Source: Salpingoeca rosetta
Lineage: Eukaryota; Protista; Choanoflagellata
Reading direction: 5' to 3'
Assembly (NCBI GenBank): GCA_033442325.1
Contig: JAWQFM010000029.1
Coordinates: 557,332-582,587 of the forward strand
DNA: 25,256 nt
Made by a program: the position numbers and the translations under genes
Notes under the pieces: model-generated
Databases searched by the model: none
Told to the model about the DNA's origin: nothing
What the model saw: only the letters and a program-made list of their open reading frames with translations
Shown here: in pieces, positions 396-23,579 of the stretch
Numbering within the stretch: position 1 is the stretch's first letter
Layout of the letters: the number at the start of each line of letters is the position of its first letter

Positions 396-722
396 CTGCA
401 GAGTTGTCCGCCTTTGTTTATGTTGTGGATATGAGCATTGCTGAGATGAGTTTGCCTTGTTGTTTTGTGTGCTTTCTGACGTGAAAAGTGCTAACACGTT
501 GTTTGCAGCAACCAGTGTGCCGTGTTGCAACTTCATTAGCATCCCCCGTTCCAGTCGGTGCCGTCACCAAACATGCACCGTTTTCAAGCACAGCCGGTAT
601 GGCTGGCTAAGACTTGAGGTGTGGCCTTCGCACTTTCCCGCACCACCCGCGTCGACGATATCTCAGCATCAGCAGTACATTCAGCGACGACAGTACCAAA
701 CCAACGCAGCAAGGCCACAACC

Positions 723-800
723 ATGAGGTTTGTTGTGGTTGCAGTGTTTGTCGCTGCCACTTGTTGTTGTTGTTGTTGTTTTCCCCCCTCTGCCACAGCG
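723..800 (+). other. Signal peptide of gene 1
   Basis: MRFVVVAVFVAATCCCCCCFPPSATA/ADV: basic n-region, hydrophobic h-region and an A-x-A cleavage motif. Confidence 0.75.
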
Positions 801-2604
801 GCAGACGTCCCTGTCGACACAACAACAACCAACGCCGACACCGACACCACCAACACCGACACCGACAAGCCCGTGCCGCTCAGCTTTGGGGACTTCTTCA
901 CTGGCGACCGGGATGTGTTCTTTGACTCCGTGTATCAGCATGAGACGCTGATTGACCACCGGCCCACGCCGGACGCCTTCACGCCGCGGCTGCGCCAGAT
1001 CACAACGCCACTGAACCAAGTGCAGTCATTGTGCCACGCCTTTGAGCAGCAAGACAAGCAGAGCGGCGGCTTCCACGTACGTGTTTGTGTTAGTGTTTTT
1101 GTTGTGTTGATGTGTGTGTTTGTGTGTGTGTGTTAGTGTTTGTGTTTGTGTTAGTGTTTGTGTGTGTGTCTGTGCTGGTCTTGCCTCCTCCCCTTGCCCT
1201 TGGCCTTGTGCGTTGCCTTTGTGTGTTTGTAATACACGTCATGCTTTCAGCGCTCTTGCCTCCTCCCCTTGCCCTTGGCCTTGTGCGTTGCCTTCCTCAA
1301 TCACGACTTTGACCTCGACCTTCATTCCCTCACACATGCACACGTACACACACGTACACACATGTACACACACACACACACAACGTACACATGATCCACA
1401 GATCAAGGAGCAAGGCGAGACGCGGCAGGTGTCGTCATGCAAGCAGATGGAGGACGAGCTGGCTGCCGGCGCTGGTTTGCTCATCCGCTACGAGGACCTC
1501 GTGGACTCCCCCGCCCAGGACCACGTCAAGCAGCTGCAGGACGGCGTGCGCGACGTGTTTGGCACAGAGTCCACCGTCCACCTGTACCACGCCACGCAGA
1601 ACGAGTCGCGCGCCCTCATGCCGCACACAGACCCCTACGACGTCCTTGTCATCCAGCTCCACGGCTCAAAGCGCTGGACAACCTGCATCCCAGACGCATA
1701 CGTCTCCGACACCGACACCAACAACGACGGCAGTGGCACCAACGCAGAGGACGACGACAACGCCAACACCGGCACTGGCGACCACGGTGCTTCTGCTTCT
1801 GCTTCTGCGTCGTCTTCCTTCCCAAGCCGCCATGGCACACGCGCACGCCCAAGTGAGGCAGAGACCATCAAGCACTTCAACCCTGCGCAGCTGGGCCAGC
1901 TGCAGGAGATCCGGCGCCAGAGGCAGCAGGGGTGCACGGCGTACCAGGACGCAGACCTGCGTGGCATGCGCTGCAACGAGTTCACGCTGCGTGCCGGTGA
2001 CACCATGTACATGCCCAAGGGGATCATCCACTTTGCGCTGTCGGGCGAGGAGGGCTCGTCACATCTCACCATCTCGCTGGAGCGCAAGGGCCTGGCGTGG
2101 GCCGATGCGCTCATGCACGCGGCGCTCTCTGGCGCGGACATTGTGGACAACCCGGCGTTCCTTGGCCACTGGAAGAACACGGTGCAGTCGCTCATCAGCG
2201 ACTACCGCGGCGTGCAGCTGCTGGAGGCCATGCCATCCTGGCACCTCAACACGGGTGCGCTGTGTGCAGCGCGTGGACAGGAACAACAGCAGCAGCTGCA
2301 GCAGCACGGTGATGGCAGTGCAGCTGGCGGCGAGCGGGATGAGGCGAAGGCGTTTTTGGCGTCGTTCCAGTCGCTGTGTCGCGAGGTTGGACCCGATGTG
2401 CTTGAGACGTACACCAAGGCAAACGACCTGGACGCGTTCCTGAATGCAGACGGCATTGGCGCGCTTGTTGAGCGCGTGTGCAGCGAGGAGTCGGCCGCCG
2501 CTGTTGTGGAGCAGCTGTGCGCACGCGGCAAAATGCCCGTGGACGTGACGTCGCCCCGCTTCCGCAAGATGCACGTGCCGCAGATGGTGCGCAACGTGTG
2601 CATT

Positions 2605-2642
<38 letters not shown>

Positions 2643-5547
2643 ATGTGCGATGTGTTTGCCTGCTATGTTCATTACTTCATGATAGCTCTGACGTTGTTGG
2701 CATGGCCCTGCGCTGATGTGTGCGACCTTGTCCCGGTGACAACAGTGACCCACCGCACGCGCCTTCGCACTCATTAACCCTCATGAACACACACGCACAC
2801 ACACGCACACATTCATACACACGTACTCTCACGCACACACACACACACACACACACTCGCATTGTCCATCACAGGAGCGTGTGCGTCGTGCAACTGTGAC
2901 GGCCGCATACACCTGCAACACTGGCTGCGATGAAAGCTGTGACACGTAAGGAACCACTTGTGCTGCATATGCCTGGCACTTGCGCTCATGACTCGGAATG
3001 CACAGCCCAACTTTATCATACACACATACACACACTCTCACCACTTGCTCGCGTCTTGTCACTTATTACCAGATCAAGCTGCAACCTTGGATGCGACGGT
3101 GGCTGCGCAAGTGGATGTGACTCCGGCTGCACCAGCTGCGACACTGGCTGCGACATCTGTTATTCAAATTGCAACACGGGCTGCGACGTGACCACGTGAG
3201 CGTAATGCCATGCGGGAGCAATTGAAGTGATGTGCTTGATGTCCTTGACTCCTTGCATCGGTTGCATATTCTGTGGTGCATATGTGTACGCCCTCACTCA
3301 TTCCCTTACGTCCGCTTTCACTGCACTGTCATCTCAGGTGTACTGGAAGCTGTGACACCGGCTGTGACATTTGCACCACCGGCTGTGACAGCCTGTGCGA
3401 TGACAGTTGCAACACGGGCTGTGATACTGGCTGTACCCTCAGCTGCGACACGGGTTGCGACACCGGCTGTAACACTGGTTGCGACTGGAGTTGTGACAGG
3501 TGCGGGGCAACTCAAGTTTTCTTTGTTGTTTGTGGTGTGCTTTGAGAATTCAATGCATCCTTATGGCCTCGCATGCGGTGACCACCCGTCTGAAGACTCT
3601 CATCTTAATGCATGTTTGCAGTTCTTGTGATACAGGGTGTAATGGCAGTTGCGACAGCTATTGCGGGAGCTGTGACAGGTTTGTTCTGTTGATCTCCCTG
3701 CTTTCGTCCTTTGTGCTTGTGGTCAATACGTCACATCAAGTCTGTTTCTACTCACCTGACGATGGCTCTGATGTACTCAACAGCTCGTGCGACAGCAGCT
3801 GCGACTTCGCGGGCTTTAGCTGCGACTCCAGTTGTGACAGTTCTTGTGATGACACACGTACGAACTTCAAACTAAGCTAGCATGCCTTGACGCTTGAGAC
3901 TCCACGTGGCGCAGTGATGTTATCCTCACATTCCTTTCTTGCTTACTTCTTTCTCGTCTTGCGACACTTTGTGATGACATAGCTTGCAGCTGTGATACTT
4001 GCTACACTGGTTGCGACAGCAGCTGTGATGGGTGCGACGCAAGCTGCACGACTGGGTGTGATGATAGTTGTGATACATGCACCACGGGATGTGATGACAG
4101 CTGCACCTCAGGCTGCGATGGAAGCTGTGACGGAGGTACGTGAACCATTGCAGTCATGATGATGTGTGACAACAACGAAGACGCGCCTGCAAAGTCAAAA
4201 TGTGGGTGTTCATGCGACAAATCACGCCTGACGTTCACGATTGCTCACCTGAACCACCATGCCCTACTGTGCTGTGCTGTGTGCTGTGCTGTGCTGTGCT
4301 GTGCTGTGCTTTAGGGTGCAACCTGGGCTGCGATGACAGCTGCGACAGCTCGTGCACACAGTCAAGCTGCGATACGGGATGTACAACCGACTGCAACGGT
4401 GGCTGCGACACGGGCTGCGACGGTCCATGCAACACGTAAGTTGGCGAAACAGGTGGTGCTCGCGTTGTTTCCATGGTGGATTGTCTGTGAGCGACACAGA
4501 CCACTGGTGGCTGCTTGTGGCAGCTCAGCCCTTGTGAAATCGTTTTTGCGCCCTTTCGTTGGTATTCATCACTGTTGCAATCCTGTGCTGTATGCATTGT
4601 GCTCGTTGAACAGGGGATGTGATGACAACTGCAACACGAGCTGTGATGAGTGCACGTACAGCAGCTGCGACAGTTCATGTGACGGATCGTGCTCGTGCAA
4701 CCCGGGCTACTACGGCAGTGGCACGTCGTGCACTGCATGTGGCCCCAACACGTACAGCGCCAGCAGCGGCCAGAGCTCGTGCACACCGTGCGGCTCCTGC
4801 GGCTCAAACCAGTACCGCGTCAACTGCGGCGGTAGCAATGATGGTTCGTGCACGTCGTGTGGGTCGTGCCCTGCAGGCTCTGAGCGCACGGGCTGCAGCG
4901 GCACCAGCGCAGGCACGTGCTCGCCGTGTGACTCGGGGTGAGTGCACGACATGGCACGTGCAATGTCGCGCGTGCAACTGAATGCAGAGGCATGTGCGTG
5001 TATGGGCGTGTATGCACTTGTGTGTGCATGTGTGTGTGCGTGCAAGTGCAAGTGTATTCTATTCATGTGTCTCAATATGTGCGTTCGCTTGTGTTATCGG
5101 GTGCGTGACCTCACACAAGGACACACCGTCTTGCTTGCATGCATGTAACGTTGTGTTGCTGCTTTCTTGTCGTTGCAGGACATACAAGACGTCACAGAAC
5201 AACCAGCCGTGCAGCCCGTGCGGGTCGTGTGCGGCCGGGTACTACCTCGCCGGGTGCGGCGGTTCCAGCGCTGGCGAGTGCGTCGGCGTGCAGTGCAACA
5301 CGCCACCGAGCGTGAGCCATGGCAGCGTGTCCTCGCTAAGCAACAACGGGCGGTATCCCAGCACAGCGACATACACGTGCGCGCCAGGGTACATGCTGGC
5401 CAGCTCCAGCGACAACAAGCTGCAGTGCCAGACAGACAAGACGTGGGCCGGGACGATGCCGCGGTGCATTGGCGTGCCGTGCCCGGGGATCAGCATTGCC
5501 CACGGCAGCGTGTCACCGTCAGGCACCATCCGTCATCCATCCACAGC

Positions 5548-5629
<82 letters not shown>

Positions 5630-7455
5630 TTGTGTGTGGGTATGGTGGTGCTGCCCGTGACATGTTGTGTGCATGTGAGACGGGCGTACAGTTGGATTGT
5701 GTCTCCTTGTCTCATACACTCATCATCATCATCACGTGTCCCTCCGTCCCCCCTTGTGCGTGCGTGCGTTTTCTTTTTTTGTGTGCAGGGTTTTCGTGCA
5801 ACACTGGGTACGTGCTGATGGGAGCGACATCTGCGCAGTGCCAGGCGGACGGCACGTGGTCGTCGCCCGCACCGACATGTGTTGGGCGGCTGTGCACCCT
5901 GCTGGACACCCCGAACCACGGCAGCGTCTCGTACACAAACAGCCGGCAGTACCCGTCCACAGCTACATACACGTGCCAGGCTGGGTATGAGCTGAGCGAC
6001 ACGGGGGATGCGCAGCGCAGCTGCATTGCCAGCACGGGCGGATTTGGCGGCACGGCGCCGTCGTGTGTGGGGGTGCTATGCAAACCACTGAGCGACCCGC
6101 AGAACGGGCACCTGCGCCTGAGCTCGACGCCAGCGCGGTACCCGGCGACGGCGGAGTTCTCGTGCGTGCCCGGATACGAGCTTGTTGGGCAGGAGCAGCT
6201 GTCGTGCAAGACGGACAAGACGTGGTCTGCGCCTGCGCCGACGTGCCGTGGAGTGCTGTGCACGGCGCCGAGCATTGACCACGCGCAGGTGTCGGCGACA
6301 TCTGGGCGGTACCCTGCTGATGCGAGCGTGACGTGTGCACCTGGGTATGGGCTGGTTGGCGCGTCGACGCTGTCGTGCCGCACGGACGGGACGTGGGGCG
6401 AGCTGCCCTCGTGCCAGCTGTGCCCGGCCAACTCGTATGCGCCGTCGCCGACACAGCCGTGTGCTTCGTGCCCTTCTGGCACGTCGACCAACGGGCAGAC
6501 GGGTGCGACCAAGTGCGAGTGCATTGCTGGACACGAGCCCAGCGGCGACGGAAGCACCTGCGTTCCCTGCCAAGGTGAGATGATGACGCAAGTGCGGGTG
6601 TGCATGTTGGAGAAGGATCTGTGTTGCTGTGAGGTAATGGCCCATGTTGCAGCGACACAGCGACGTCCTTGTGCTTGCATGCACTCGCACCTGATGTTGT
6701 CTCACATGTTCCCTGTATGCCTCACGCCCAATGCGCCCAATTGCGTGCTTGTGCGAACATCATCATCACCACCATCATCATCACCGCTGCGTGCCAGCCA
6801 ACCACTTCAAACCGGACTTTGGCTCCGTGTCGTGCCAGCCATGCCAATCTGGGTTCCAGACTGAGAACGGCGACTTTACCCGCTGCGTCGGTGTCCCTTG
6901 CGACCCCGTGCGAGACGTGAGTCTTCTCCATGCATGTGTGTGTGTGTGTGTGCATGCACGTTAGGCTGTGGGGTGCATGGAGAAGTCCAGGTGCATGTTT
7001 CGGTTGCATGCAGGCAAGCACGTTGCCTGCAGGCAAGCGAGACATGCAAGGGTGTGTGGTTATTCATTGTGCTACACTTGACCGTCCTCACATTTTGTGT
7101 GCGTGTGCCCTTGTGTACTGCACGTCCCTCCCAACCCCATGCAGATTGAGAACGGCGACCCAGAGAACACCATGATGCACCGGTACCCGGCCACTGTGTC
7201 GTATGAGTGCGACACGGGGTTCCAGCTTGTTGGCGATGTCAGTTCCATCACCTGCCAGACAGATGGCACGTGGTCTGCGCTTCCCTCCTGCACCTACATC
7301 TGCGGCGATGGTACGGCAATGTTGTCCTTGCTTGCGTACCCATGTTTGGTGTGTGTGCTTGTGTGTGCGTATATATTGTCCACAGGCAAGTGACAAGCTT
7401 ATCTCGACACACACCCATCACATCCATCATGTCCACCCCACATCTCCCACCAGTT

Positions 7456-7494
<39 letters not shown>

Positions 7495-10400
7495 GCACAC
7501 ACACACGCACGCACAAGCGCACAAGCACGTCTATATTCTGCTTGCTGTTTCACCGTTGCTCGCAATTCAACTCCGTCTGCCCCTCACATGTGTTGCTCGC
7601 TTGCGTTCGTCCAACACTGCTGGCACGTGTGCATGTGCATGCAACTAGGCCTCGTTGTTGACGGGGAGGAGTGCGACGACGGCAACACAGACGATGGCGA
7701 TGGCTGCTCGTCCACGTGCCAGCTGGAGGATACACACGCGTGCGTGGACCCTGGCGAGGCGTGCGTGTACTGCAACTTCACGTCGCGGCCGGAGCGGCTG
7801 GTGCTTGCGTGCGACGACCCCATGCTGGACACAAAGGTGCAGACGTGGGCAGACGCAACCGGCAACGCAGAGGTGCTGGACCACGAGCACTGCGGCGACC
7901 CCTCGCTGTCGTACGTTGCGGGGAAGCCGCGCGGCACGGTGCCGGGGTGCTACCGCAGCGTGTACGAGTTCATGGTTGCGTTCAACGGCGGCAAGGTGAT
8001 GGAGACGGCGACGGGCGTGGTGCGCGTGTACGACGACACCAAGCCGACGTTCCAAGGCCTGCCGTCATCCACAACAGCAGACTGCCACAGCGTCCCCTCG
8101 TTTGCGGATGTGTCGGCATCGGACACGTGCATGGCGTCGTCGCCCGCAGTGAGCAAGCAGGAGGTGCGGACAGACGGGGCGTGCCCGTACGCATACACGC
8201 TGACGCGGACGTGGAACACGCAGGACGCGTGCGGCAACGAGAACGCGGCGACGCAGGTTGTGACGGTGCAGGACGTGACCAAGCCGACGTTCACCACGCG
8301 GCCCACAGACCGGGTGCTGGAGTGCTCTGCGGACGTGGACGCGGACATTGAGGCGCTGCGCATGAAGCACGTGGACGCGGCAGCATCGGACCTGTGCTCC
8401 GACACGCTGTTGTTTGAGACGGTTGAGACAGCGCGGGACCTGAGCGGGTGCGGCGGCACGGGCCAGGTGTCGCTGAAGGTGACGGTGACCGACGAGTGCG
8501 GCAACCCGCAGGAGGAGACGGTGACCGTCGACGTGGTGGACAAGACAGCCCCAGTGCCCGTGAACGTGCCTGCGGATGTGACGGTGGAGTGCTCTGCGAT
8601 CCCGCCCATTGCAGATGACGTGCATGCGAGGGACGCGTGCGGGCTGCGGCGCGTGAATGCGACGGCGAGCGAGGAGCGGCAGGACGGGCCGTGCCCGCAC
8701 AGCTACGACCTGCTTCGCACATTCACGTTTGTGGACGCGTGCGACAACCCGGTGAGCAGGACGCAGCGGGTGACGGTGCAGGACACGACGGGCCCCGTCA
8801 TCACGCGGGACGCCGACGACCTGGAGCTGGAGTGCAGCGCAGAGCGCAACGACGACACGATTGCGGCGTGGCTGGCGGTGAACGGCGGCGCGCAGGCCAT
8901 GGACGCGTGCAGCGGCGTGCACACGCTGACGTGGACGCACGACTACGACCCGCAGTACTACGAGGTGTTCCCTGGCGGCTGCAGCGTGGGCACGGGCCAG
9001 GTGCTGGTGACGTTCACGGTTGCGGACGAGTGCGGGCGCACCAGCACGGTGAACGGCAGCATCAAGATTGTGGATACGCGGGAGCCCGCGTTTGTTGCGC
9101 CGCTGCCGCCGCTGACGGGGGCGTGCGACGCGGTGCCGCAGGCGACGGTGCCGCAGGCGTACGACAACTGCACGGGGGAGGTGACACCGACGCAGACGAC
9201 GACGCGGATGGACGGCGACTGCCCACACCAGTACCACCTGATCCACTCGTGGGTTGCGGAGGACGAGTGCGGCTGGACAACGACGACGCAGCAGACGGTG
9301 ACGGTGACGGACGCTGCGGCGCCCACCATCACCAAGCAGAGCGCAGACAGGACGGTGGAGTGCTCGGTGGCGGACAACGAGGCGCGGCTGGATGCATTCC
9401 TGGCGGAGCACGGCGGCGCGCAGGCGACGGAGGTGTGCGGCGGCGTGACGTGGCTGTACTCTGACGTGGACACGGTGCTGGATGTGGCGCAGGGCGCGTC
9501 TGGGGACGTTGTGGCGCAGGACGGGTGCGGGACGACGTTCACGGCGACGGCGCACTTCTATGCTGTTGACGAGTGCAGCAACGCGGCGAAGACGACGGCG
9601 ACGTTCACTGTGCAGGACACGCTGGCGCCCGTGCTTGACACGCCGCCGGCGGCGTCGATTGACGCGTCGTGCGATGCGGTGCCCGCGCTGAGCAACATCA
9701 GCGCAACGGACATGTGCGCGGGCGCGCTGGTGGCTGTTGCCAGCGAGGAGCGGCTGGACGGGCGGTGCACGCACACGTACACGCTGTCGCGGACGTGGAT
9801 GGTGCAGGACCCGTGCGGGCACATGACAACCAAGTCGCAGCTGGTGCACGTGGACGACAGCGCGGAGCCCGTGATCACCAAGGAGGCGGAGGACCTGGTT
9901 GTGGAGTGCAACGCGGAGACGGACAGCGTGATTGCGGCGTGGCTGGAGGCGCACGGCAACGCGGCGGCGGCAGACGCGTGCGACCGGGAGCTGACGTGGC
10001 AGCACGACTTTGAGAGCGTCAAGTACCTGCTGCAGTACGGGTGCGGGTCGAACGCGGTGAACGTGACGTTCACGGTGATGGACGACTGCGGCAACGCGGC
10101 TGAGACGCAGGCGCGTGTGGTTGTGCAGGACACGACGGCGCCGTTCTTCACGCAGCTGCCGAGCGACGACCGCGCGGAGTGCGACCCGACGACAAACCAG
10201 AACACGCTGGATGCGTTCCTGGCGACGTACGGCGGCGCGCGGGCGTCTGACGTGTGCGGCAGCGTGGTTGGGCAGGACGTGGCGTGGTCGTACGTGGTGG
10301 ACCTGCAGACGGTGTGCGGCAACGCGTACGACAGCGTGGTGACGTTTACGGCGACGGACCACTGCGGCAACAACGTGAGCGCGACGGCGACAATGGCGTT

Positions 10401-12545
10401 TGAGGACACGCAGAAGCCCGTAATCAAGCTGCGTGGCGCGGATCCGCAGCTGGCGCAGGTTGGGTTCCCCTGGCTAGACCCCTCTGTGGACCTTGCTACG
10501 GACCGGTGCCACCAGGAGCTGACGCCGTTTGTTGAGGTGGTGAACCCGCCCAACACGACGCAGGTCGGCAACGTGACGGTGTTCTACCGGGTTGAGGACG
10601 CGTGCGGGTATGTTGGGCTGGCGAACCGCACGGTGCATGTGCGGGACACGCTGCCGCCGGAGGTTGAGGTGCTTGGGCCCGGGGAGATGTTTGTGCGGGC
10701 CGGCTCGACGTTCTACGACCCGGGCGTGCGTGCGCGGGACAACGTGTGGCCGACGGTGAGCGTGGAGACGGTTGTTGTTGCGGACGGCGCAGAGTCGCGG
10801 GCGGTGCACGAGGCGCCGCAGGCGCAGGGGCGCGAGGTGTTCCATGTTGTGTACACGGTGCGGGATGGCAGCGACAACCAGGTGACGCAGGTTGGGCGGA
10901 CGGTGCACGTGCTTGCGGCGCCGGAGCGGTCGCCTGCGTCGTCGTCAGCAACACTGTCGTTTGACTTTGGGGTGACGCTTGCTGTTGCGGATGTGCCTGG
11001 CGGCGGTGCTGGCGGTGCTGGCGGGCGGCGCGAGGTGTACTCTGTTGCGCGGGCGGTGACGAGCGTGTCGGTGGACCCGGCTGCGCACACGCTTGAGGCG
11101 GACGGGCTGGACGTTGTGCTTGGCGGGGACGTGGAGGACTTTGTGGTTGAGGGCGGAGACGGCAGCAGCGCGTCGCCGGGGGCGGCGTATGTTGAGCTGC
11201 ACGTTGTTGTTGGGGGCGCAACGGCGGACGTGGTTGAGGCTGCGCGGGCGTCGCCCAAGGTTGAGGCGATGACTGAGCTGACACGCGCGGTGTCGTTCTT
11301 TGGCTCGATGCGCAACGCGGACGGCGACTGCGCGGGGCTGGACACGATTCCGGATGCGCTTGCGCGGCACGGACGCACGTATGTGAGCGCGGAGTGCGAG
11401 GGCTGCCTGTGCGTGTACGAGGCGCTTGAGCCGTCGTCGGAGGGCGAGTTTGATGCGCCGCAGCTTGAGGAGACGGTGCAGTACCACGTGACGCTGCGGC
11501 CGTCGGACAACCGGGCCTTCAACCTGGCGCAGCTGCGCCTCAAGCTTTACGAGCTGGGCGTTGTGCCGGTGCTGCTGCGCTTCGAGCCCACGCCGGCGCC
11601 CACGACAACGACCACCACCTCCACCACATCCGCCGCCACCACCACTGACACCACGACAAGCGCTGCACCGACGTCTGCTGCTGCAGGTGGCGCTGGCACA
11701 GCTGCGGCAAACGCGACCGCTGTCAGTGGCAACGCAACAGCAACAGTGACTGCAACGGGTGGTGCTGGTACATCGTCCAGCACAACGACGACGAGCACGA
11801 CGACGACGACGAGCACGACGACGACCACGACGCAGGCTGTTGAAGCAGTGACGTTTGTGACGCGAACGCCGTTGCCAAAGGGAAGCGATGCACTGCTGCC
11901 TGCGCGGGCTGTTGTTGAGAATGTGCGTGCGGTTGTTGCGACGCGGGTGGAGATGGCTGTGACGCCTGACCTGACGCGGGTGACGCTGCTGAACCAGTTC
12001 TACCACCTCGGCATCGTTCCCAAGACGTGGTCCATGGGTAAGCCTACAAGTTTGTGTGTGTGTGTGTGTGTTTTTGTTCTTGTGGAGTGGAGAGGGAATG
12101 TTGCTGGGGTGTGGTTGTAGTATGTTGCCCCACGTGGACGGGCTTGCTCTTGTGTGTTTGTTGTCGTTACGTTACGTTACGTTTGTGTGTGTATGTGTGT
12201 GTGTGTGTGTGTGTGTCGACATGCTATCCCATGTGCGGTGGTATGGAAGGTGCTGGGGATGCTTGCATCCGTGATGTGCACTACTGTCCTGTGCGTTTGC
12301 TCACACGCGCGTTTGCGTGGTGTCTTGGGTTGTGCTGAAATGCAGAGGCACGCGAGTCTGAGACGGTGCTTGTTGTTGTGACGTACAACGACGTGACGGC
12401 GGCAGCGGTGGCTACGCTGGAGAACGAGGTGACGTGGGTGCTGGGTGCCGGTGTCTGTGACGTACCTGTCGACGGAGCCGCTTACGCCGCCCGCGTGGTC
12501 GTGCAACTACACGGTGGACACGGCCCGGTGTTGGGGCGAACATGA
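723..12545 (+). CDS. Giant secreted/cell-surface multidomain protein (JmjC oxygenase + Cys-Asp repeat + sushi + HYR-like repeats), about 2884 aa as the sequence reads
   Basis: Phase-consistent GT-AG exons: 723-1076, 1402-2586, 2875-2945, 3073-3195, 3338-3499, 3622-3678, 3784-3857, 3983-4135, 4315-4435, 4614-4937, 5179-5549, 5789-6574, 6798-6916, 7145-7310, 7649-12037, 12346-12545 (TGA reached after an apparent frameshift near 12444). Total 8655 nt = 2885 codons including the stop. The ancestral gene evidently continued to 14672. Confidence 0.85.
870..2100 (+). other. JmjC/cupin 2-oxoglutarate Fe(II) oxygenase domain, ribosomal-oxygenase (NO66/MINA53/ycfD, Cupin_4) type
   Basis: VFGTESTVHLYHATQNESRALMPHTDPYDVLVIQLHGSKRW...FTLRAGDTMYMPKGIIHFA...SSHLTISL matches the NO66-type pattern PHxD..xFVLQLxGxKxW...LxPGDxLYxPRGxIHxA...SLHLT. 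His is at 1624, Asp at 1630 and the distal His at 2029; the 2OG-binding Lys in GSKRW is present. Confidence 0.9.
1179..1294 (+). repeat. 41-bp direct repeat in intron 1 of gene 1
   Basis: tcttgcctcctccccttgcccttggccttgtgcgttgcctt occurs at 1179-1219 and 1254-1294. Confidence 0.9.
2878..2889 (+). other. Proprotein convertase (furin/kexin-type) site RVRR
   Basis: The spliced junction reads ...MHVPQM-ERVRR/ATVTAAYTCNTG. This fits the R-x-R-R consensus and sits exactly between the oxygenase region and the Cys repeat. Confidence 0.7.
2914..4690 (+). repeat. Coding Cys-x-x-x repeat array (C[D/N]x[G/S]) spread over 8 exons
   Basis: Example: CDTGCDICTTGCDSLCDDSCNTGCDTGCTLSCDTGCDTGCNTGCDWSCDS. Hand count gives about 67 Cys units in about 265 aa, about 52 with Asp/Asn directly after Cys, and no Lys/Arg/His. 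Confidence 0.9.
4268..4310. repeat. (GCTGT)n pentanucleotide microsatellite abutting a 3' splice site
   Basis: tgtgctgtgctgt...gtgct directly before the ttag acceptor at 4314. Confidence 0.9.
4690..5285 (+). other. TNFR/GCC2-GCC3 (ephrin-receptor-like) Cys-rich modules
   Basis: CNPGYYGSGTSCTACGPNTYSASSGQSSCTPCGSC...CPAGSERTGCSGTSAGTCSPCDSGTYK...CSPCGSCAAGYYLAGC. A second such stretch lies at about 6420-6890 (CPANSYAPSPTQPCASCPSGTST). Confidence 0.65.
5294..7291 (+). other. Six sushi/CCP domains (five tandem at 5294-6414, sixth at about 6897-7291)
   Basis: Repeated C..P....[HN]G......YP..A.[YF].C..GY.L.G.....C..DGTW....P.C pattern. Confidence 0.9.
5550..5628. repeat. (TG)n microsatellite beginning at a 5' splice site
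   Basis: The donor GT is the first unit of the repeat; the same is seen at 19200-19250. Confidence 0.95.
7301..7730 (+). other. Myxococcus-type cysteine-rich repeat (DUF4215-like), split by an intron
   Basis: Spliced sequence CGDGLVVDGEECDDGNTDDGDGCSSTCQLE. Confidence 0.85.
7780..10914 (+). repeat. About 9-10 HYR-like Ig-fold repeats followed by two DUF5011-like domains
   Basis: Units are delimited by V.D.T.P (DDTKP, DVTKP, DKTAP, DTTGP, DTREP, DAAAP, DTLAP, DSAEP, DTTAP) and carry D.CG[N] motifs. They are followed by DTQKPVIKLRGADP and DTLPPEVEVLG...FYDPGVRARD...VYTVRDGSDN...RTVHV. Confidence 0.8.
11587..11832 (+). repeat. Thr/Ala-rich mucin-like low-complexity segment
   Basis: PTPAPTTTTTTSTTSAATTTDTTTSAAP...STTTTSTTTTTSTTTTTTQ encoded by ACG/ACC repeats. 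Confidence 0.85.
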
Positions 12546-14672
12546 CTGGCGCTGCAGCGGCGGTGAACGAGACGCTGCACATGCAGGGGCTGACGCAGGG
12601 GGTCGACTACCGACTGCACGGGTGCGACGGCGACGTGAATGCGAGCGCAGCGTGTGTGATTGAGACGCGTGCTGCGCTTGGCGGCGGTGTACTGCTTGCG
12701 CTTGAGGCGTGGCCGGCGGTGGTTGCTGTTCGGGATGACGGATGCGTGACGCTGGACGACCTCCTGCTCGCCTCCATCAAGGCCAAGCTTGGTAGGGTGT
12801 GATGTTTGGGGTGTTTGTGCATGAGATTTGTGTGTGTGTGTGTGTGTATTCGAGTGTGTGGGCTGTGTATGGGCTGTGTATGGGCTGTGTGTGTTGTCTG
12901 CACTCGTCGTTGTGTGTGTGTATTGTGCTGCTGTGCCGTTGCCTGCAAGCAATGATACTCACGTGGAACACTGTGCCATGTTGGTGCTGCTGCGTGTGTG
13001 CTGGTTGACAGGTGGTCTGCTGCCGTACCCGGTGGACCGGGTGACGTTTAGCGTGGATGATCCGAGCCTGCGTCGTTCATCACAGGTCGGCATGTTGGAA
13101 GAAGGGTGTGTGTGACTGGCACAGATCAATGTGCGCGTGGGTGTGTTTGGGTATGGGTGTTGATGTTTGATTTGGGATGTGCACTGTCAGCTCGTGTTGT
13201 TGTGGTGCATGTCTACTGGCAGCAACGCATATGCATGTGCGCTGGTGCACGTGCTGACTCGCTTTCATCCACAGCTCATGCACAACAAACATACACCACA
13301 TACCTACCTCATCATCACCAACACCCGAACCACCCACATGCACACGCAGGTGTCTGTGACGGTTGGGTTTGGTGGGGTGAGCGACCCTGCTGTGATTGCT
13401 GGGAGCCCTGGCGCGGACTTTGATGTGCCGGATGACCGGTACGAGCTTCGGTTCCAGGTTGTCAACGCGACGGATGCCGAGGCGCTGGCGCTTTCGGCGC
13501 TGGATGCTGCACGTGTGCCGACGATTGAGGTTGAGGTGAACGGAGACCAGGTCCGTGCCGTTGTTGTGACGCGGCTGAGCGGCGACCATGTTGCAGTCTT
13601 GGATGCGCAGCCAGATGTTGTCAACGGCACCATTGTTGGTCCAGGTTGGTATATTCGTGTGCATGTGAATGTTTGCGCGCACGTGCGTGTGCATTTGTGT
13701 GTTGTGCACTTCGCTTGTATTTGTGTGTGCGTGTGCGTGTACTGCTTGCACTTGCATGCAGGCATGTGTATGGTCGGTCACACGTGTGTGTGTGTGAGTG
13801 ATGTGATTGCGCGGAGAAGCACTTGCTTTGCTTGGGACAATGACGGATGCGCTTGCAACGACGTTGCCTGTCTTGCACTGACGCTGAGGCTGACTCTGTG
13901 TGTGTGTGACTCTTGACAACTGTTGTGCTGGGCCGTACCTCACCGCGTTTGGTTTGCATGGCTGCTGTTTTGCTGCTGTAGTGTCGCTGAATGCGCAGCT
14001 GGCGCTTGAGGATGCAATTGAGGCGCTGCTGCGGCTTGTGCGGCGCGGGGAGGTGGAGGCGATTGTTCTGGGCCGCCGCGTGCCTGCGGTGACCATTGAG
14101 CGGCGCACAAGGCAGCCAAGGAGCGACAGACGGTGGCGTTCACGAACCCGGCATACGACACGCCAGGCGACATCACGGCGTGGGGCGCTGACGACACTGG
14201 CGAGTACCAGGACTTTGATGCTGTGCAGGGCGATGGCAACGACCTGTACGATGAGCCTGCACTGGCGCATGGCAAGGGCCGCGTTGTGCACAACCCGCTG
14301 TACGACGGCGTTGATGAGGATGCGGCGATGCTTGGTATGTACGCAGATGCAAGCATGCTGCGGTCCAGCGGCGGCGGCGGCGGCGGTGAGGATGACGCTG
14401 GCGAGACATACATGGCCATTGGCGAAGAGGGTGCTGTGCTGTTTGGTGACGAGGAGGAGGGTGTGGACGAGGCAGACTATGCCGACTTGGAGGAGATAGG
14501 GTACCTTGACGTTGGGCCCGAAGCTGAGGGTGATGGCGCTGATGGCGATGATGCTGACGTGGAGGCGATGTACGAGGACATGGCAGACACGTCTGACGAG
14601 GAGCACGGGTTTGGGTCAGACTATGACGAGGTGGACGGAGCCCAGGCTGCCGCAGAGGATTCCGATGAGTGA
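12346..14672 (+). pseudogene. Disrupted 3' portion of gene 1 (two frameshifts, TM deleted, Tyr-rich tail out of frame)
   Basis: Exon 12346-12791 needs three frames (shifts near 12444 and 12523). Exons 13012-13085, 13350-13644 and 13982-14100 match the - strand paralog. At 14100/14101 the sequence jumps to the cytoplasmic tail, which is open in a different frame to TGA 14672. Confidence 0.7.
12885..14160 (+). repeat. Inverted segmental repeat, left copy
   Basis: 12885-14100 is the reverse complement of 24042-25256 (roughly 15 differences by eye, introns included). 14101-14160 is identical to the reverse complement of 23348-23407. Confidence 0.95.
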
Positions 14673-22889: not shown

Positions 22890-23579
22890 TCACTGGCTGA
22901 GCGTGGCCATGAAGTCGTCTTCATTAAATCCAAGCTCGCCAATGTCGGCATACTCGTCCTCCTCTTCGCCAAACATAAACGCGCCATCCTCTCCAATTTC
23001 CATGTACGTCTCGCTCGTGTTCCCATCCGCAACTTCCATGTACGCCTCGTCGCGAGCTTCGTTGGGGTCACACGTCATGTACTCTTCTTGGACGGGGCCG
23101 TTGGCATCGCCGAATTCGAAGTTGGGGTTGAAGCCGGGAAGCGTCGATCGCAAAGCGCTGGCATCAGCGTACATGGCATTAGCCTCGGGTGCACGCTCAG
23201 CCTCCTCGCCGAGGTACAGCGGGTTGTGCACAACGCAGCCCTTTGAGCGAAAGACTGAAGGTTCATCGTACAGGTCATTGTCATCATAGTCTGCATCAGT
23301 CGTATCTTGGTAGAACGCCGTGTTGACAGAAGCAATGTCGCGAGGCCTGTCGTATGCCGGGTTCGTGAACGCCACCGTCTGTCGCTCCTTGGCTGCCTTG
23401 TGCGCCGCTGGGGGCGACACCCCGCGCCGCCGCCGCCCAATCACCGCAAGCACAACAGCAGCAATCAGCACCACGCCGCCCACAATCGCAACAGCAATCT
23501 GCCACGCAGCGGTCCCACTGTTCACACACACAAACACACACACACACATAATTTAACAACACAGTTTGCAAGAATGGAC

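What the first reader, a model, noticed from the sequence alone, without database searches (positions are those of the whole stretch)
723..4690. Secreted JmjC hydroxylase fused to a candidate own substrate: a possible self-modifying surface protein
Seen: one phase-consistent spliced frame joins a signal peptide, a catalytically complete NO66/ycfD-type JmjC domain (H1624-x-D1630...H2029, GSKRW Lys), an RVRR site and about 50 C-[D/N] motifs, then a receptor ectodomain. Established: NO66/MINA53/ycfD are cytosolic or nuclear beta-carbon hydroxylases of ribosomal proteins; 2OG oxygenases do work in the ER lumen (prolyl and lysyl hydroxylases, AspH on EGF Asp/Asn); enzyme-substrate fusions are known in borosin and BURP-domain peptide pathways. 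Inference: the oxygenase is a cis-acting pro-domain that beta-hydroxylates Asp/Asn (or otherwise oxidises the repeat) in the secretory pathway and is then cut off. That would leave a heavily modified, possibly metal-chelating, N-terminal array. I know of no description of this architecture but cannot search for one.
Basis: partly seen in the sequence, partly recalled or inferred. Interest (0 to 1): 0.9.

Follow-up and report, generated by a model that had tools for sequence, protein, structure and literature searches.

The report
Secreted JmjC oxygenase fused to receptor
This is a real choanoflagellate gene that puts a working-looking iron/2-oxoglutarate oxygenase behind a signal peptide and in front of a furin-type cut site, an unclassified Cys-Asp repeat domain and a large receptor-like ectodomain; the architecture was predicted for Monosiga in 2010, but nobody has tested what the enzyme does.

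Summary
Eleven GT-AG, phase-consistent exons (723-5549) join a signal peptide, a MINA53/NO66-clade JmjC domain, RVRR, a 279-residue C-[D/N/T]-x-[G/S] array (67 Cys, 52 C-[DN]) and TNFR/ephrin-like and Sushi modules. The JmjC domain has an intact HxD...H triad and the 2OG lysine.

Complete transcriptome ORFs from four other choanoflagellates and two annotated Salpingoeca rosetta paralogues carry the same order on one polypeptide. The genome, near-identical to S. rosetta, has 12 such paralogues. All keep the catalytic residues. Eleven keep [RK]-x-[RK]-R plus an "SYTC" mini-exon. Ten carry long arrays.

The architecture is not undescribed. Iyer et al. 2010 (PMC2938197) reported receptor-like proteins with extracellular MINA/No66 JmjC domains in Monosiga.

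Three points go beyond that paper:
- the conserved dibasic site;
- a roughly 200-residue array domain that matches no Pfam family;
- multi-hit clusters of the array pattern lying mostly at the JmjC loci in this genome.

The "self-substrate" idea remains untested. JmjC relatives without arrays argue against a strict pairing.

The scan flagged the same kind of gene on another piece of this genome (s1-435311).

The parts
723..1076 (+). Exon 1. It encodes the signal peptide (about 723-803), a Thr/Asp-rich linker, and the N-terminal strands of the JmjC fold (LSFGDFF..FFDSVYQHETLIDHR).
   Evidence: translation, GT donor at 1077. Homologous exon 1 lies upstream of the JmjC exon in 9 paralogue loci. 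N-terminal signal peptides are present in P0018, P0019, P0167, P0037 and P0045.
1077..1401 (+). Intron 1 (GT..AG, microsatellite-rich).
1402..2586 (+). Exon 2. It encodes the JmjC double-stranded beta-helix and an all-helical C-terminal extension. HxD is at 1624-1632, the 2OG lysine at 1669-1671, and the distal His at 2029-2031. A low-complexity acidic insert lies between the two halves of the fold.
   Evidence: Pfam JmjC_2 scores 57.3 bits. The residues align to MINA53 and NO66. The AF2 model of orthologue P0167 has pLDDT 93.5, and its top PDB matches are NO66, YxbC, MINA53 and YcfD.
2587..2874 (+). Intron 2 (GT..AG). If it were retained, the frame would stop at 2641-2643, giving a stand-alone secreted JmjC.
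   Evidence: The same exon end, without a stop codon, is seen in 11 paralogues and in metagenomic relatives.
2875..2945 (+). Exon 3 (mini-exon): E-RVRR-ATVTAAYTC-NTGCDESCD. It carries the furin-type dibasic site (2878-2889), the conserved 'SYTC' motif and the start of the array.
   Evidence: Equivalent sites are RQKR, RSRR, RSRR, RQRR and RTRR in P0018, P0019, P0022, P0167 and P0168, and RSRR and RTRR in L001 and L003.
3073..4435 (+). Exons 4-9 (3073-3195, 3338-3499, 3622-3678, 3784-3857, 3983-4135, 4315-4435): the C-[D/N/T]-x-[G/S] tetrapeptide array.
   Evidence: GT-AG, phases, translation. (array only on the + strand at 2914-4692). (position-specific composition). The region matches no Pfam or Atlas family.
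4614..4937 (+). Exon 10: the end of the array (to about 4692), then a TNFR/ephrin-receptor-like (GCC2/3-type) cysteine-rich module.
   Evidence: This exon is 61-69% identical to P0022 and P0014.
5179..5549 (+). Exon 11: a cysteine-rich module and the first Sushi domains.
5789..14669 (+). The rest of the gene: Sushi repeats, HYR-like and Ig-like modules, a Thr-rich stalk, and an acidic tail ORF with NPxY motifs (14100-14669). No transmembrane segment is found in this copy, and the frame breaks near 14098.
   Evidence: Collinear tblastn matches to P0018, P0022 and P0168. Pfam on the orthologues. Hydrophobicity scan.

Best explanation
The region is the 5' third of one large gene. It belongs to a choanoflagellate family in which a MINA53/NO66-clade JmjC Fe(II)/2-oxoglutarate oxygenase has moved into the secretory pathway and sits at the N-terminus of a receptor-like ectodomain.

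Shown:
- the gene structure;
- the signal peptide;
- the intact catalytic residues in all 12 paralogues;
- the ROX-type fold;
- a conserved exposed R-x-[KR]-R site directly after the enzyme module;
- a conserved array domain of about 200-280 residues that follows it.

Inferred:
1. The enzyme works in the ER/Golgi lumen, where Fe(II), 2OG, O2 and ascorbate support other protein hydroxylases.
2. It hydroxylates side chains of secretory cargo. The attached ectodomain, or that of a co-trafficking paralogue, is the most available client.
3. A furin/kexin-type convertase then cuts at RVRR in the late Golgi, so that enzyme and ectodomain become separate chains.

Which residue is hydroxylated is not known. 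Whether the array is the client is also not known.
For: One gene:
- 11 GT-AG phase-consistent exons.
- Collinear with complete transcriptome ORFs of Hartaetosiga balthica (3090 aa), Salpingoeca infusionum (3044 aa), Microstomoeca roanoka (N-terminally truncated) and P0167 (3262 aa), and with S. rosetta PTSG_11500 and PTSG_10194.
- Nine runs from 3 studies hold 0.50-0.54 of the sampled 31-mers of 1402-4700. The exon-only fraction is 0.539, and the JmjC exon alone would give 0.353.

Enzyme:
- JmjC_2 scores 57 bits.
- HxD, Lys and His align to MINA53 and NO66.
- In 54 relatives, D147 is invariant and H145, K160 and H248 are at least 90% conserved.
- AF2 pLDDT is 93.5, and the top PDB matches are NO66, YxbC, MINA53 and YcfD.
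- All 12 genomic paralogues keep HTDPYDV..GSKRW and PKGIIH[FY]A.

Secretory:
- Signal peptides are conserved.
- Three cysteines are at least 90% conserved in this clade; MINA53 has Tyr and Val at two of these positions in the alignment.

Cleavage:
- The dibasic site is present in 11 of 12 paralogues and in all close orthologues.
- 25 of 51 broader relatives have a site 215-345 residues after HxD, against 9.6% expected from the background rate.
- The site lies in a low-confidence linker straight after the last helix.
- P_proprotein domains occur at 3-4 loci in the genome.

Prior prediction of cell-surface hydroxylase function: PMC2938197.
Against: - There are no reads from this locus across the junctions.
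- There is no biochemical evidence for activity, cleavage or any substrate.
- The Monosiga members in the set lack a detectable dibasic site.
- Furin cleavage often leaves the two chains associated, so 'cut off' does not follow from the site alone.
- The tools return no PAE or contacts for the cis AF2 model, and the array in it was below pLDDT 50.
- This copy lacks a transmembrane segment and has a frame break before its tail. It may be an anchorless or decaying paralogue.
Confidence: 0.5

Rival explanations
1. The JmjC module is a cis-acting pro-domain whose substrate is the C-[D/N]-x-[G/S] array itself. It beta-hydroxylates Asp/Asn there, giving a heavily modified and possibly metal-binding N-terminus after furin cleavage.
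For: - In this genome, multi-hit clusters of the array pattern lie directly downstream of 10 of the 12 JmjC paralogues. These account for 56 of the 92 pattern hits. Most other hits look like singleton or microsatellite-type matches, by eye.
- The array is a conserved domain with conserved landmarks in five species (194-204 residues, 45-49 Cys) and always starts a few residues after the dibasic site.
- Repeat position 2 is D (31), N (10) or T (7) of 51 units. The D/N interchange is like that at AspH sites.
Against: - JmjC plus the dibasic site occur with little or no array at the C34 and C4 loci, in C. flexa P0045, and in many relatives.
- Two loci (C30, C31) show array-like hits with no detected JmjC. 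I could not fetch them.
- The array has no AspH consensus.
- Known ROX enzymes hydroxylate His or Arg.
- D/N/T followed by x-G/S is also the signature of Asx/ST turns in a disulfide-rich fold.
Confidence: 0.2
2. Sensor model (Iyer et al. 2010). The JmjC domain stays on the mature receptor as its outermost domain. It reports O2, redox state, Fe or 2OG-like ligands through the cytoplasmic tail. RxRR cleavage only converts the receptor to a two-chain form.
For: - Proposed in PMC2938197.
- Relatives carry tyrosine-kinase or SH2 tails.
- Orthologues have a transmembrane helix and NPxY motifs.
- The module is always the N-terminal, membrane-distal domain.
Against: - Extracellular Fe(II) and 2OG are scarce in sea water (my knowledge).
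- Strict retention of every catalytic residue in 12 paralogues suggests turnover rather than binding alone.
- This copy has no transmembrane segment.
Confidence: 0.2
3. Trans-acting secreted enzyme. The fusion is a delivery device, and after cleavage the free JmjC modifies other matrix or prey-derived proteins.
For: - The dibasic site is conserved even where the downstream domains differ.
- Intron-2 retention would also give a free secreted JmjC.
Against: - No candidate trans substrates are known.
- Cofactors outside the cell are limiting.
- The enzyme has expanded in step with the receptors rather than as stand-alone genes.
Confidence: 0.08
4. Artefact. Two neighbouring genes (a secreted JmjC and a Cys-repeat receptor) were joined only by the reader's splicing.
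For: - There are no reads from this locus.
- An in-frame stop lies 19 codons into intron 2.
Against: - The fused ORF is present in complete transcriptome assemblies of four species and in two annotated S. rosetta paralogues.
- The JmjC exon never ends in a stop codon, and the next exon never starts with Met, in the paralogue loci examined.
Confidence: 0.02

Closest known systems
Receptor-like proteins with extracellular MINA/No66-clade JOR/JmjC domains of Monosiga brevicollis (Iyer, Abhiman, de Souza, Aravind 2010, NAR 38:5261; PMC2938197), e.g. A9V2P6, A9V8E8, A9V0X5, A9V427
   Same: - An N-terminal extracellular JmjC of the MINA/No66 clade with a C-terminal helical extension.
- Fusion to GCC2/3-type cysteine-rich repeats and Sushi domains.
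- A lineage-specific expansion in choanoflagellates.
- The Monosiga proteins hit the window's JmjC at about E 1e-24 to 1e-25.
   Different: - The paper does not mention a cleavage site (no occurrence of 'furin' or 'cleav').
- The paper's main text does not name the tetrapeptide array.
- The Monosiga members in my set lack a detectable dibasic site and have only short arrays.
- Here the family is a Sushi/HYR giant ectodomain with an NPxY tail, not a kinase or SH2 tail.
Ribosomal oxygenases NO66 (RIOX1), MINA53 (RIOX2), YcfD/RoxA and YxbC
   Same: - Pfam JmjC_2.
- The HxD...H triad and the 2OG lysine at +15.
- Best structural matches.
   Different: - Those enzymes are nuclear or cytosolic and hydroxylate His or Arg of ribosomal proteins.
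- This one has a signal peptide, clade-specific conserved cysteines and an all-helical C-terminal part with no evident winged-helix strands.
- It is fused to an ectodomain.
- Canonical NO66-like and MINA-like genes exist separately in the same genome (C29:524749, C32:571766).
JMJD8, an ER-lumenal JmjC protein of animals (PMC5684140)
   Same: A JmjC-domain protein with an N-terminal signal peptide that resides in the secretory pathway.
   Different: - By my knowledge, JMJD8 belongs to the FIH/JMJD5-like group rather than the MINA/No66 clade. This was not tested here.
- It is a small JmjC-only protein.
- It is not fused to an ectodomain and has no dibasic junction.
AspH (aspartyl/asparaginyl beta-hydroxylase) acting on EGF domains; prolyl and lysyl hydroxylases
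   Same: 2OG oxygenases that act in the ER lumen on Cys-rich or repetitive secretory substrates. This is the functional analogy for the proposed mechanism.
   Different: - They come from different oxygenase families (not JmjC_2).
- They are separate polypeptides from their substrates.
- The AspH consensus C-x-[DN]-x4-[FY]-x-C is absent from the array.
Enzyme-substrate fusions in RiPP pathways (borosins, BURP-domain cyclases)
   Same: Enzyme and candidate substrate repeats lie on one polypeptide, with later proteolysis.
   Different: - Those are cytosolic or vacuolar small-peptide pathways with shown autocatalysis.
- Here the 'substrate' is a conserved folded-domain-sized region of a protein of roughly 3000 residues, and no modification has been shown.

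Membership tests
MINA53/NO66/YcfD (ROX) clade of JmjC oxygenases (Pfam JmjC_2, PF08007) | Profile match above the curated threshold | tested here: met
   57.3 bits against a cut-off of 22 on exon 2. The same family is found on P0014, P0018 and P0019.
MINA53/NO66/YcfD (ROX) clade of JmjC oxygenases (Pfam JmjC_2, PF08007) | Fe(II) triad HxD...H and the 2OG-binding Lys on the strand after HxD | tested here: met
   H1624, D1630, K1669 and H2029 align to the MINA53/NO66 motifs PHyD..GeKhW and GtIHqA. They are conserved in at least 90% of 54 relatives and in all 12 paralogues.
MINA53/NO66/YcfD (ROX) clade of JmjC oxygenases (Pfam JmjC_2, PF08007) | ROX-type fold (DSBH plus helical dimerisation domain plus C-terminal winged helix) | tested here: inconclusive
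   The AF2 model has pLDDT 93.5. The top Foldseek hits are NO66, YxbC, MINA53 and YcfD, with E 1e-14 to 1e-8 and TM 0.35-0.51. The C-terminal 140 residues are all helical, and no wing strands are seen.
MINA53/NO66/YcfD (ROX) clade of JmjC oxygenases (Pfam JmjC_2, PF08007) | Cytosolic or nuclear enzyme acting on ribosomal proteins | tested here: not met
   A conserved signal peptide and fusion to an ectodomain. It is structurally a ROX relative, but it should not be named a ribosomal oxygenase, which is the automatic UniRef name.
Choanoflagellate receptor-like extracellular MINA/No66 proteins (Iyer et al. 2010) | N-terminal extracellular JmjC joined to GCC2/3, Sushi or Ig-type ectodomain modules | tested here: met
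   Described.
Choanoflagellate receptor-like extracellular MINA/No66 proteins (Iyer et al. 2010) | Transmembrane helix and cytoplasmic signalling tail | tested here: not met
   Orthologues and the minus-strand twin have a transmembrane helix. This copy has none, and the frame breaks before its NPxY tail ORF.
Furin/kexin-processed pro-proteins | Accessible R-x-[KR]-R at a domain boundary | tested here: met
   RVRR at 2878-2889. It is conserved in paralogues and orthologues and lies in a low-pLDDT linker after the last helix.
Furin/kexin-processed pro-proteins | A convertase is present in the organism | tested here: met
   P_proprotein (PF01483) matches above the cut-off at 3-4 loci of the genome.
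Furin/kexin-processed pro-proteins | Actual cleavage | not testable with these tools
   Needs a western blot or N-terminal sequencing of tagged protein.
AspH-type Asp/Asn beta-hydroxylation substrates | Consensus C-x-[DN]-x4-[FY]-x-C in an EGF fold | tested here: not met
   No match in the array or in the first 998 residues.
Self-modifying enzyme-substrate fusion | The enzyme modifies repeats on its own polypeptide | not testable with these tools
   Only co-occurrence could be tested. 10 of 12 paralogues have arrays and 2 have almost none.

The most novel reading that the evidence does not exclude
The secreted JmjC is a dedicated, cis-acting maturation enzyme for the Cys-Asp array. It hydroxylates the repeated Asp/Asn (or another repeated residue) in the ER and is then removed by a furin-type convertase. 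The receptor would be born as an enzyme-substrate pro-protein. That would be a new class of post-translational modification system, on a domain with no known relatives, in the closest living relatives of animals.
Probability: 0.2. Interest if true: 0.8.

Novelty: new member of a known kind. Interest (0 to 1): 0.55.

Why it matters
Protein hydroxylation in the secretory pathway (collagen, EGF domains) is tied to animal extracellular matrix. A JmjC-type hydroxylase recruited to the same compartment in choanoflagellates would be an independent, lineage-specific solution.

The family has been known only from a 2010 in-silico note. It is large (12 genes here), conserved across craspedid choanoflagellates, and fully intact catalytically.

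It now comes with three concrete handles:
- a conserved cleavage site;
- a conserved unclassified array domain;
- a genetically tractable host.

That turns "what do extracellular JmjC domains do?" into a bench-testable question. It also shows that the automatic database name "Ribosomal oxygenase 2" for these proteins is misleading.

Tried and rejected
- **Read laying on 600-5540.** There is therefore no read-level evidence. The window file was used only inside sandbox scripts, as a BLAST subject and for regex scans.
- **Complex prediction.** I tested the P0167 JmjC module plus Fe with the first 67 array residues. The result was no verdict (score 0.00, partner poorly folded). It is not evidence either way.
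- **AF2 of JmjC plus array in cis.** The array was below pLDDT 50 with no secondary structure, so its fold is unknown.
- **Pfam and ESM Atlas on the array.** There were no meaningful hits.
- **Protein search of the genome with one array exon.** It found only itself and its twin. I replaced it with DNA pattern searches. The first pattern was too long. The second was swamped by (TGTGAT)n microsatellites and its listing was truncated. The third was usable.
- **A weak tblastn hit to the array at 22056-21883 on the minus strand.** No array is there.
- **Searches for the window's own annotated protein.** Records of this genome appear to be withheld. Only paralogues were returned.
- **Literature searches.** I found no work on extracellular or secreted JmjC in choanoflagellates after 2010.

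Full report
**1. What is in the sequence**

The window is eukaryotic. It is GC-rich, has short GT-AG introns full of (GT)n/(CA)n, and holds large exons.

From the ATG at 723 I could chain eleven exons:
- 723-1076
- 1402-2586
- 2875-2945
- 3073-3195
- 3338-3499
- 3622-3678
- 3784-3857
- 3983-4135
- 4315-4435
- 4614-4937
- 5179-5549

Every junction is GT-AG and in phase. I corrected the last donor by eye.

The product, in order:
- It starts MRFVVVAVFVAATCCCCCCFPPSATA|ADV. This has a short charged n-region, a hydrophobic core and Ala at -3 and -1.
- A Thr/Asp linker follows.
- Next come the N-terminal strands of a JmjC fold (..FFDSVYQHETLIDHR).
- Exon 2 (395 aa) follows.

Exon 2 scores 57.3 bits on Pfam JmjC_2 (PF08007, cut-off 22). 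In phmmer alignments to MINA53 and NO66, the window's PHTDPYDVLVIQLHGSKRW pairs with PHYDDVEVFILQLEGEKHW, and GIIHFA pairs with GTIHQA.

Exon 3 opens E-RVRR-ATVTAAYTC. From there to 4692 runs a 279-residue tract with 67 Cys and 52 C-[DN], and 51 of 66 Cys spacings equal four. The unit is C-[D31/N10/T7]-[T/S/G/D]-[G25/S20].

TNFR/ephrin-receptor-like modules and Sushi modules follow.

**2. One gene or two**

Evidence for the fusion therefore comes from relatives.

An exhaustive HMMER search with exon 2 found long proteins with the JmjC at their N-terminus. Their origins are complete TransDecoder ORFs from choanoflagellate transcriptomes:
- Hartaetosiga balthica, 3090 aa
- Salpingoeca infusionum, 3044 aa
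- Microstomoeca roanoka, 2799 aa, N-terminally truncated
- Choanoeca flexa, 2360 aa

The search also returned Monosiga brevicollis proteins and S. rosetta PTSG_11500. A further search added P0167 (3262 aa, complete) and S. rosetta PTSG_10194 (3100 aa).

The sequences of P0018, P0019 and P0167 read: signal peptide, JmjC, '..LPVDVTS..F', [RK]-x-[RK]-R, 'SYTC', array, TNFR-like, Sushi x5-6, HYR-like, Ig-like, transmembrane helix, tail with NPxY. The window is collinear with them from 1399 to about 14300.

Metagenomic genomic contigs of a relative with 48% JmjC identity show the same exon order. Their JmjC exon has no stop codon and is followed by 'RSRRDTVTTSYTCTSGCDESCN'.

There is also indirect support from this organism. 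Nine runs from three studies hold 0.50-0.54 of the sampled 31-mers of 1402-4700. The fraction lying wholly in my exons is 0.539, and the JmjC exon alone would give 0.353. This fits intron-free RNA contigs that contain both the JmjC exon and the array exons. It does not prove they are linked, and the 98%-identical twin may contribute words.

**3. The family in this genome**

The genome is 55.4 Mb in 68 contigs. It matches PTSG_11500 and PTSG_10194 at 94-99% over exons, so it is S. rosetta or a near-identical strain.

Exon 2 finds 12 loci. Three lie on the window's own contig:
- this one;
- a 98%-identical inverted twin whose JmjC lies about 11 kb beyond the window end;
- an 87%-identical copy about 16 kb upstream.

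Features of the 12 loci:
- All 12 keep HTDPYDV..GSKRW and PKGIIH[FY]A.
- Eleven show a mini-exon beginning [RK]-x-[RK]-R followed by ..[ST]Y.C...
- Ten carry 75-198 residues of array by a strict pattern.
- The two most divergent (C34, C4) have almost none.

Canonical NO66-like and MINA-like genes exist separately.

A DNA pattern for C[DN]xG-C[DN]xx-C gives 92 hits against 3 for the reversed control. Of these, 56 fall directly downstream of ten JmjC loci. Most of the others look like singleton or microsatellite-type matches, judged by eye. Two loci (C30, C31) have two hits each and no detected JmjC.

**4. The enzyme module**

An AF2 model of the P0167 module (54-sequence alignment) has mean pLDDT 93.5 and pTM 0.91. 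It shows a double-stranded beta-helix followed by about 140 helical residues.

Foldseek ranks NO66, YxbC, MINA53 and YcfD first (E 1e-14 to 1e-8). FIH, JMJD5 and TYW5 rank lower.

In the alignment, D147 is invariant and H145, K160 and H248 are at least 90% conserved. So are three cysteines (C165, C216, C229). In the MINA53 alignment, two of these positions are Tyr and Val. I read them as clade-specific disulfides, which fits an oxidising compartment. That is an inference.

**5. The junction**

The dibasic site is the most conserved feature after the catalytic core:
- RVRR in the window and its twin
- RQKR in PTSG_11500 and H. balthica
- RTRR in PTSG_10194
- RSRR in S. infusionum and M. roanoka
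- RQRR in P0167
- RARRR in C. flexa
- RSRR and RTRR in the metagenomic contigs

Among 51 broader relatives, 25 have such a site 215-345 residues after HxD, against 9.6% expected from the background rate in the same proteins. These sequences are related to each other, so this is not a probability. The Monosiga members lack the site.

In the cis AF2 model the site lies in the low-confidence linker straight after the last helix. The genome has furin/kexin P-domains at 3-4 loci. Cleavage is therefore plausible but not shown.

**6. The array**

In five species the tract between the dibasic site and 'C.C..G[FY].G' is 194-204 residues with 45-49 Cys. It has shared landmarks (..SCDSSCDF..FSCDSSCD....CTPTSCD..C.GPC..). 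It is a conserved domain rather than a free-running repeat. The window's copy is expanded to about 274 residues.

The array matches no Pfam family and gave no usable Atlas hit. AF2 did not model it (pLDDT 28-49). It has no AspH consensus.

D/N/T at position 2 followed by G/S two residues later is what a hydroxylation site could look like. It is also what Asx/ST turns in a disulfide-rich scaffold, or a Ca2+ site, would look like.

**7. Prior knowledge**

[quoted passage not shown] These are joined to GCC2/3, Ig, disintegrin or Sushi domains and to SH2 or tyrosine-kinase tails. The authors proposed hydroxylation of cell-surface proteins or redox sensing. They mention no cleavage site.

JMJD8 is an ER JmjC protein of animals (PMC5684140).

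I found no later work on these choanoflagellate proteins.

**8. Reading**

I take as settled:
- It is one gene.
- It is a member of the known extracellular MINA/No66 family.
- It has an intact active site.

My best mechanistic reading is that the module is a lumenal protein hydroxylase made in cis with its likely client ectodomain and separated from it at RVRR by a convertase. I give this about 0.5.

That the array itself is the substrate is possible. Co-occurrence is strong in this genome. But JmjC plus the dibasic site occur without arrays, and nothing shows modification. I give it about 0.2.

The sensor model of Iyer et al. remains open, also at about 0.2.

A complex prediction gave no verdict and counts for nothing.

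**9. Caveat on 'surface protein'**

This copy shows no transmembrane segment. After '..GRRVPAVTIE' the acidic NPxY tail ORF (14100-14669) is in another frame. The inverted twin keeps 'AWQIAVAIVGGVVLIAAVVLAVIGRRRR' near 23510 on the minus strand. This copy may be anchorless or decaying.

Noticed in passing
window 13980-14669 (+) and 23510-23440 (-): The plus-strand gene has no stalk or transmembrane segment. '..VPAVTIE' ends near 14098, and the acidic NPxY tail ORF (14100-14669) is in a different frame. The inverted twin on the minus strand keeps a clear transmembrane helix (AWQIAVAIVGGVVLIAAVVLAVIGRRRR). This bears on the scan note about a convertible anchored/anchorless pair.
   Followed up: partly
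G000:C29:541170 (+), C29:558733 (+, this gene), C29:592758 (-), C29:524749 (+): Three secreted-JmjC receptor paralogues lie within about 55 kb on one contig (87%, 100% and 98% identity in the JmjC exon). The canonical NO66-like gene (82 bits, HHDDIEAFVLQVEGSKHW) lies about 34 kb upstream of the window.
   Followed up: partly
L042:1274-1330 (G000:C27, PTSG_10194 locus): The public model of PTSG_10194 starts at an internal Met (MAATRLSNEQ..). The genomic frame continues upstream through a signal-peptide-like FMLLACLVWTVTLPTAMAA, so the annotated protein probably lacks its true N-terminus.
   Followed up: partly
window 762-845; L044:1123-1521: The signal peptide's CCCCCC run comes from a (TGT)n microsatellite. 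The Thr-rich linker after it varies in length between paralogues, and the twin has a run of more than 35 Thr.
   Followed up: no
G000:C30:4077-5092 (-) and G000:C31:514379-515495 (+): Each locus has two array-type pattern hits about 1 kb apart. They are near-identical to hits in the C12 paralogue, but no JmjC was detected on these contigs. These are possible array-bearing genes without the enzyme.
   Followed up: no
P0037, P0044, P0047, P0159, P0169 (UniRef names): UniRef auto-names these 1900-4300-residue secreted receptor-like proteins 'Ribosomal oxygenase 2', which is misleading.
   Followed up: no
alignment A1, positions C165, C216, C229 of P0167:38-449: Three cysteines are at least 90% conserved in the secreted JmjC clade (WTtC.P, GCT.Y, M.C..FTL). 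In the alignment to MINA53, two of these positions are Tyr and Val. They are candidate disulfides.
   Followed up: partly
P0118 (MMETSP 'Sexangularia sp. CB-2014'): A 1353-residue JmjC + array + transmembrane + tyrosine-kinase protein is labelled as coming from an amoebozoan transcriptome. This is either a wider distribution of the family or choanoflagellate contamination of that sample.
   Followed up: no
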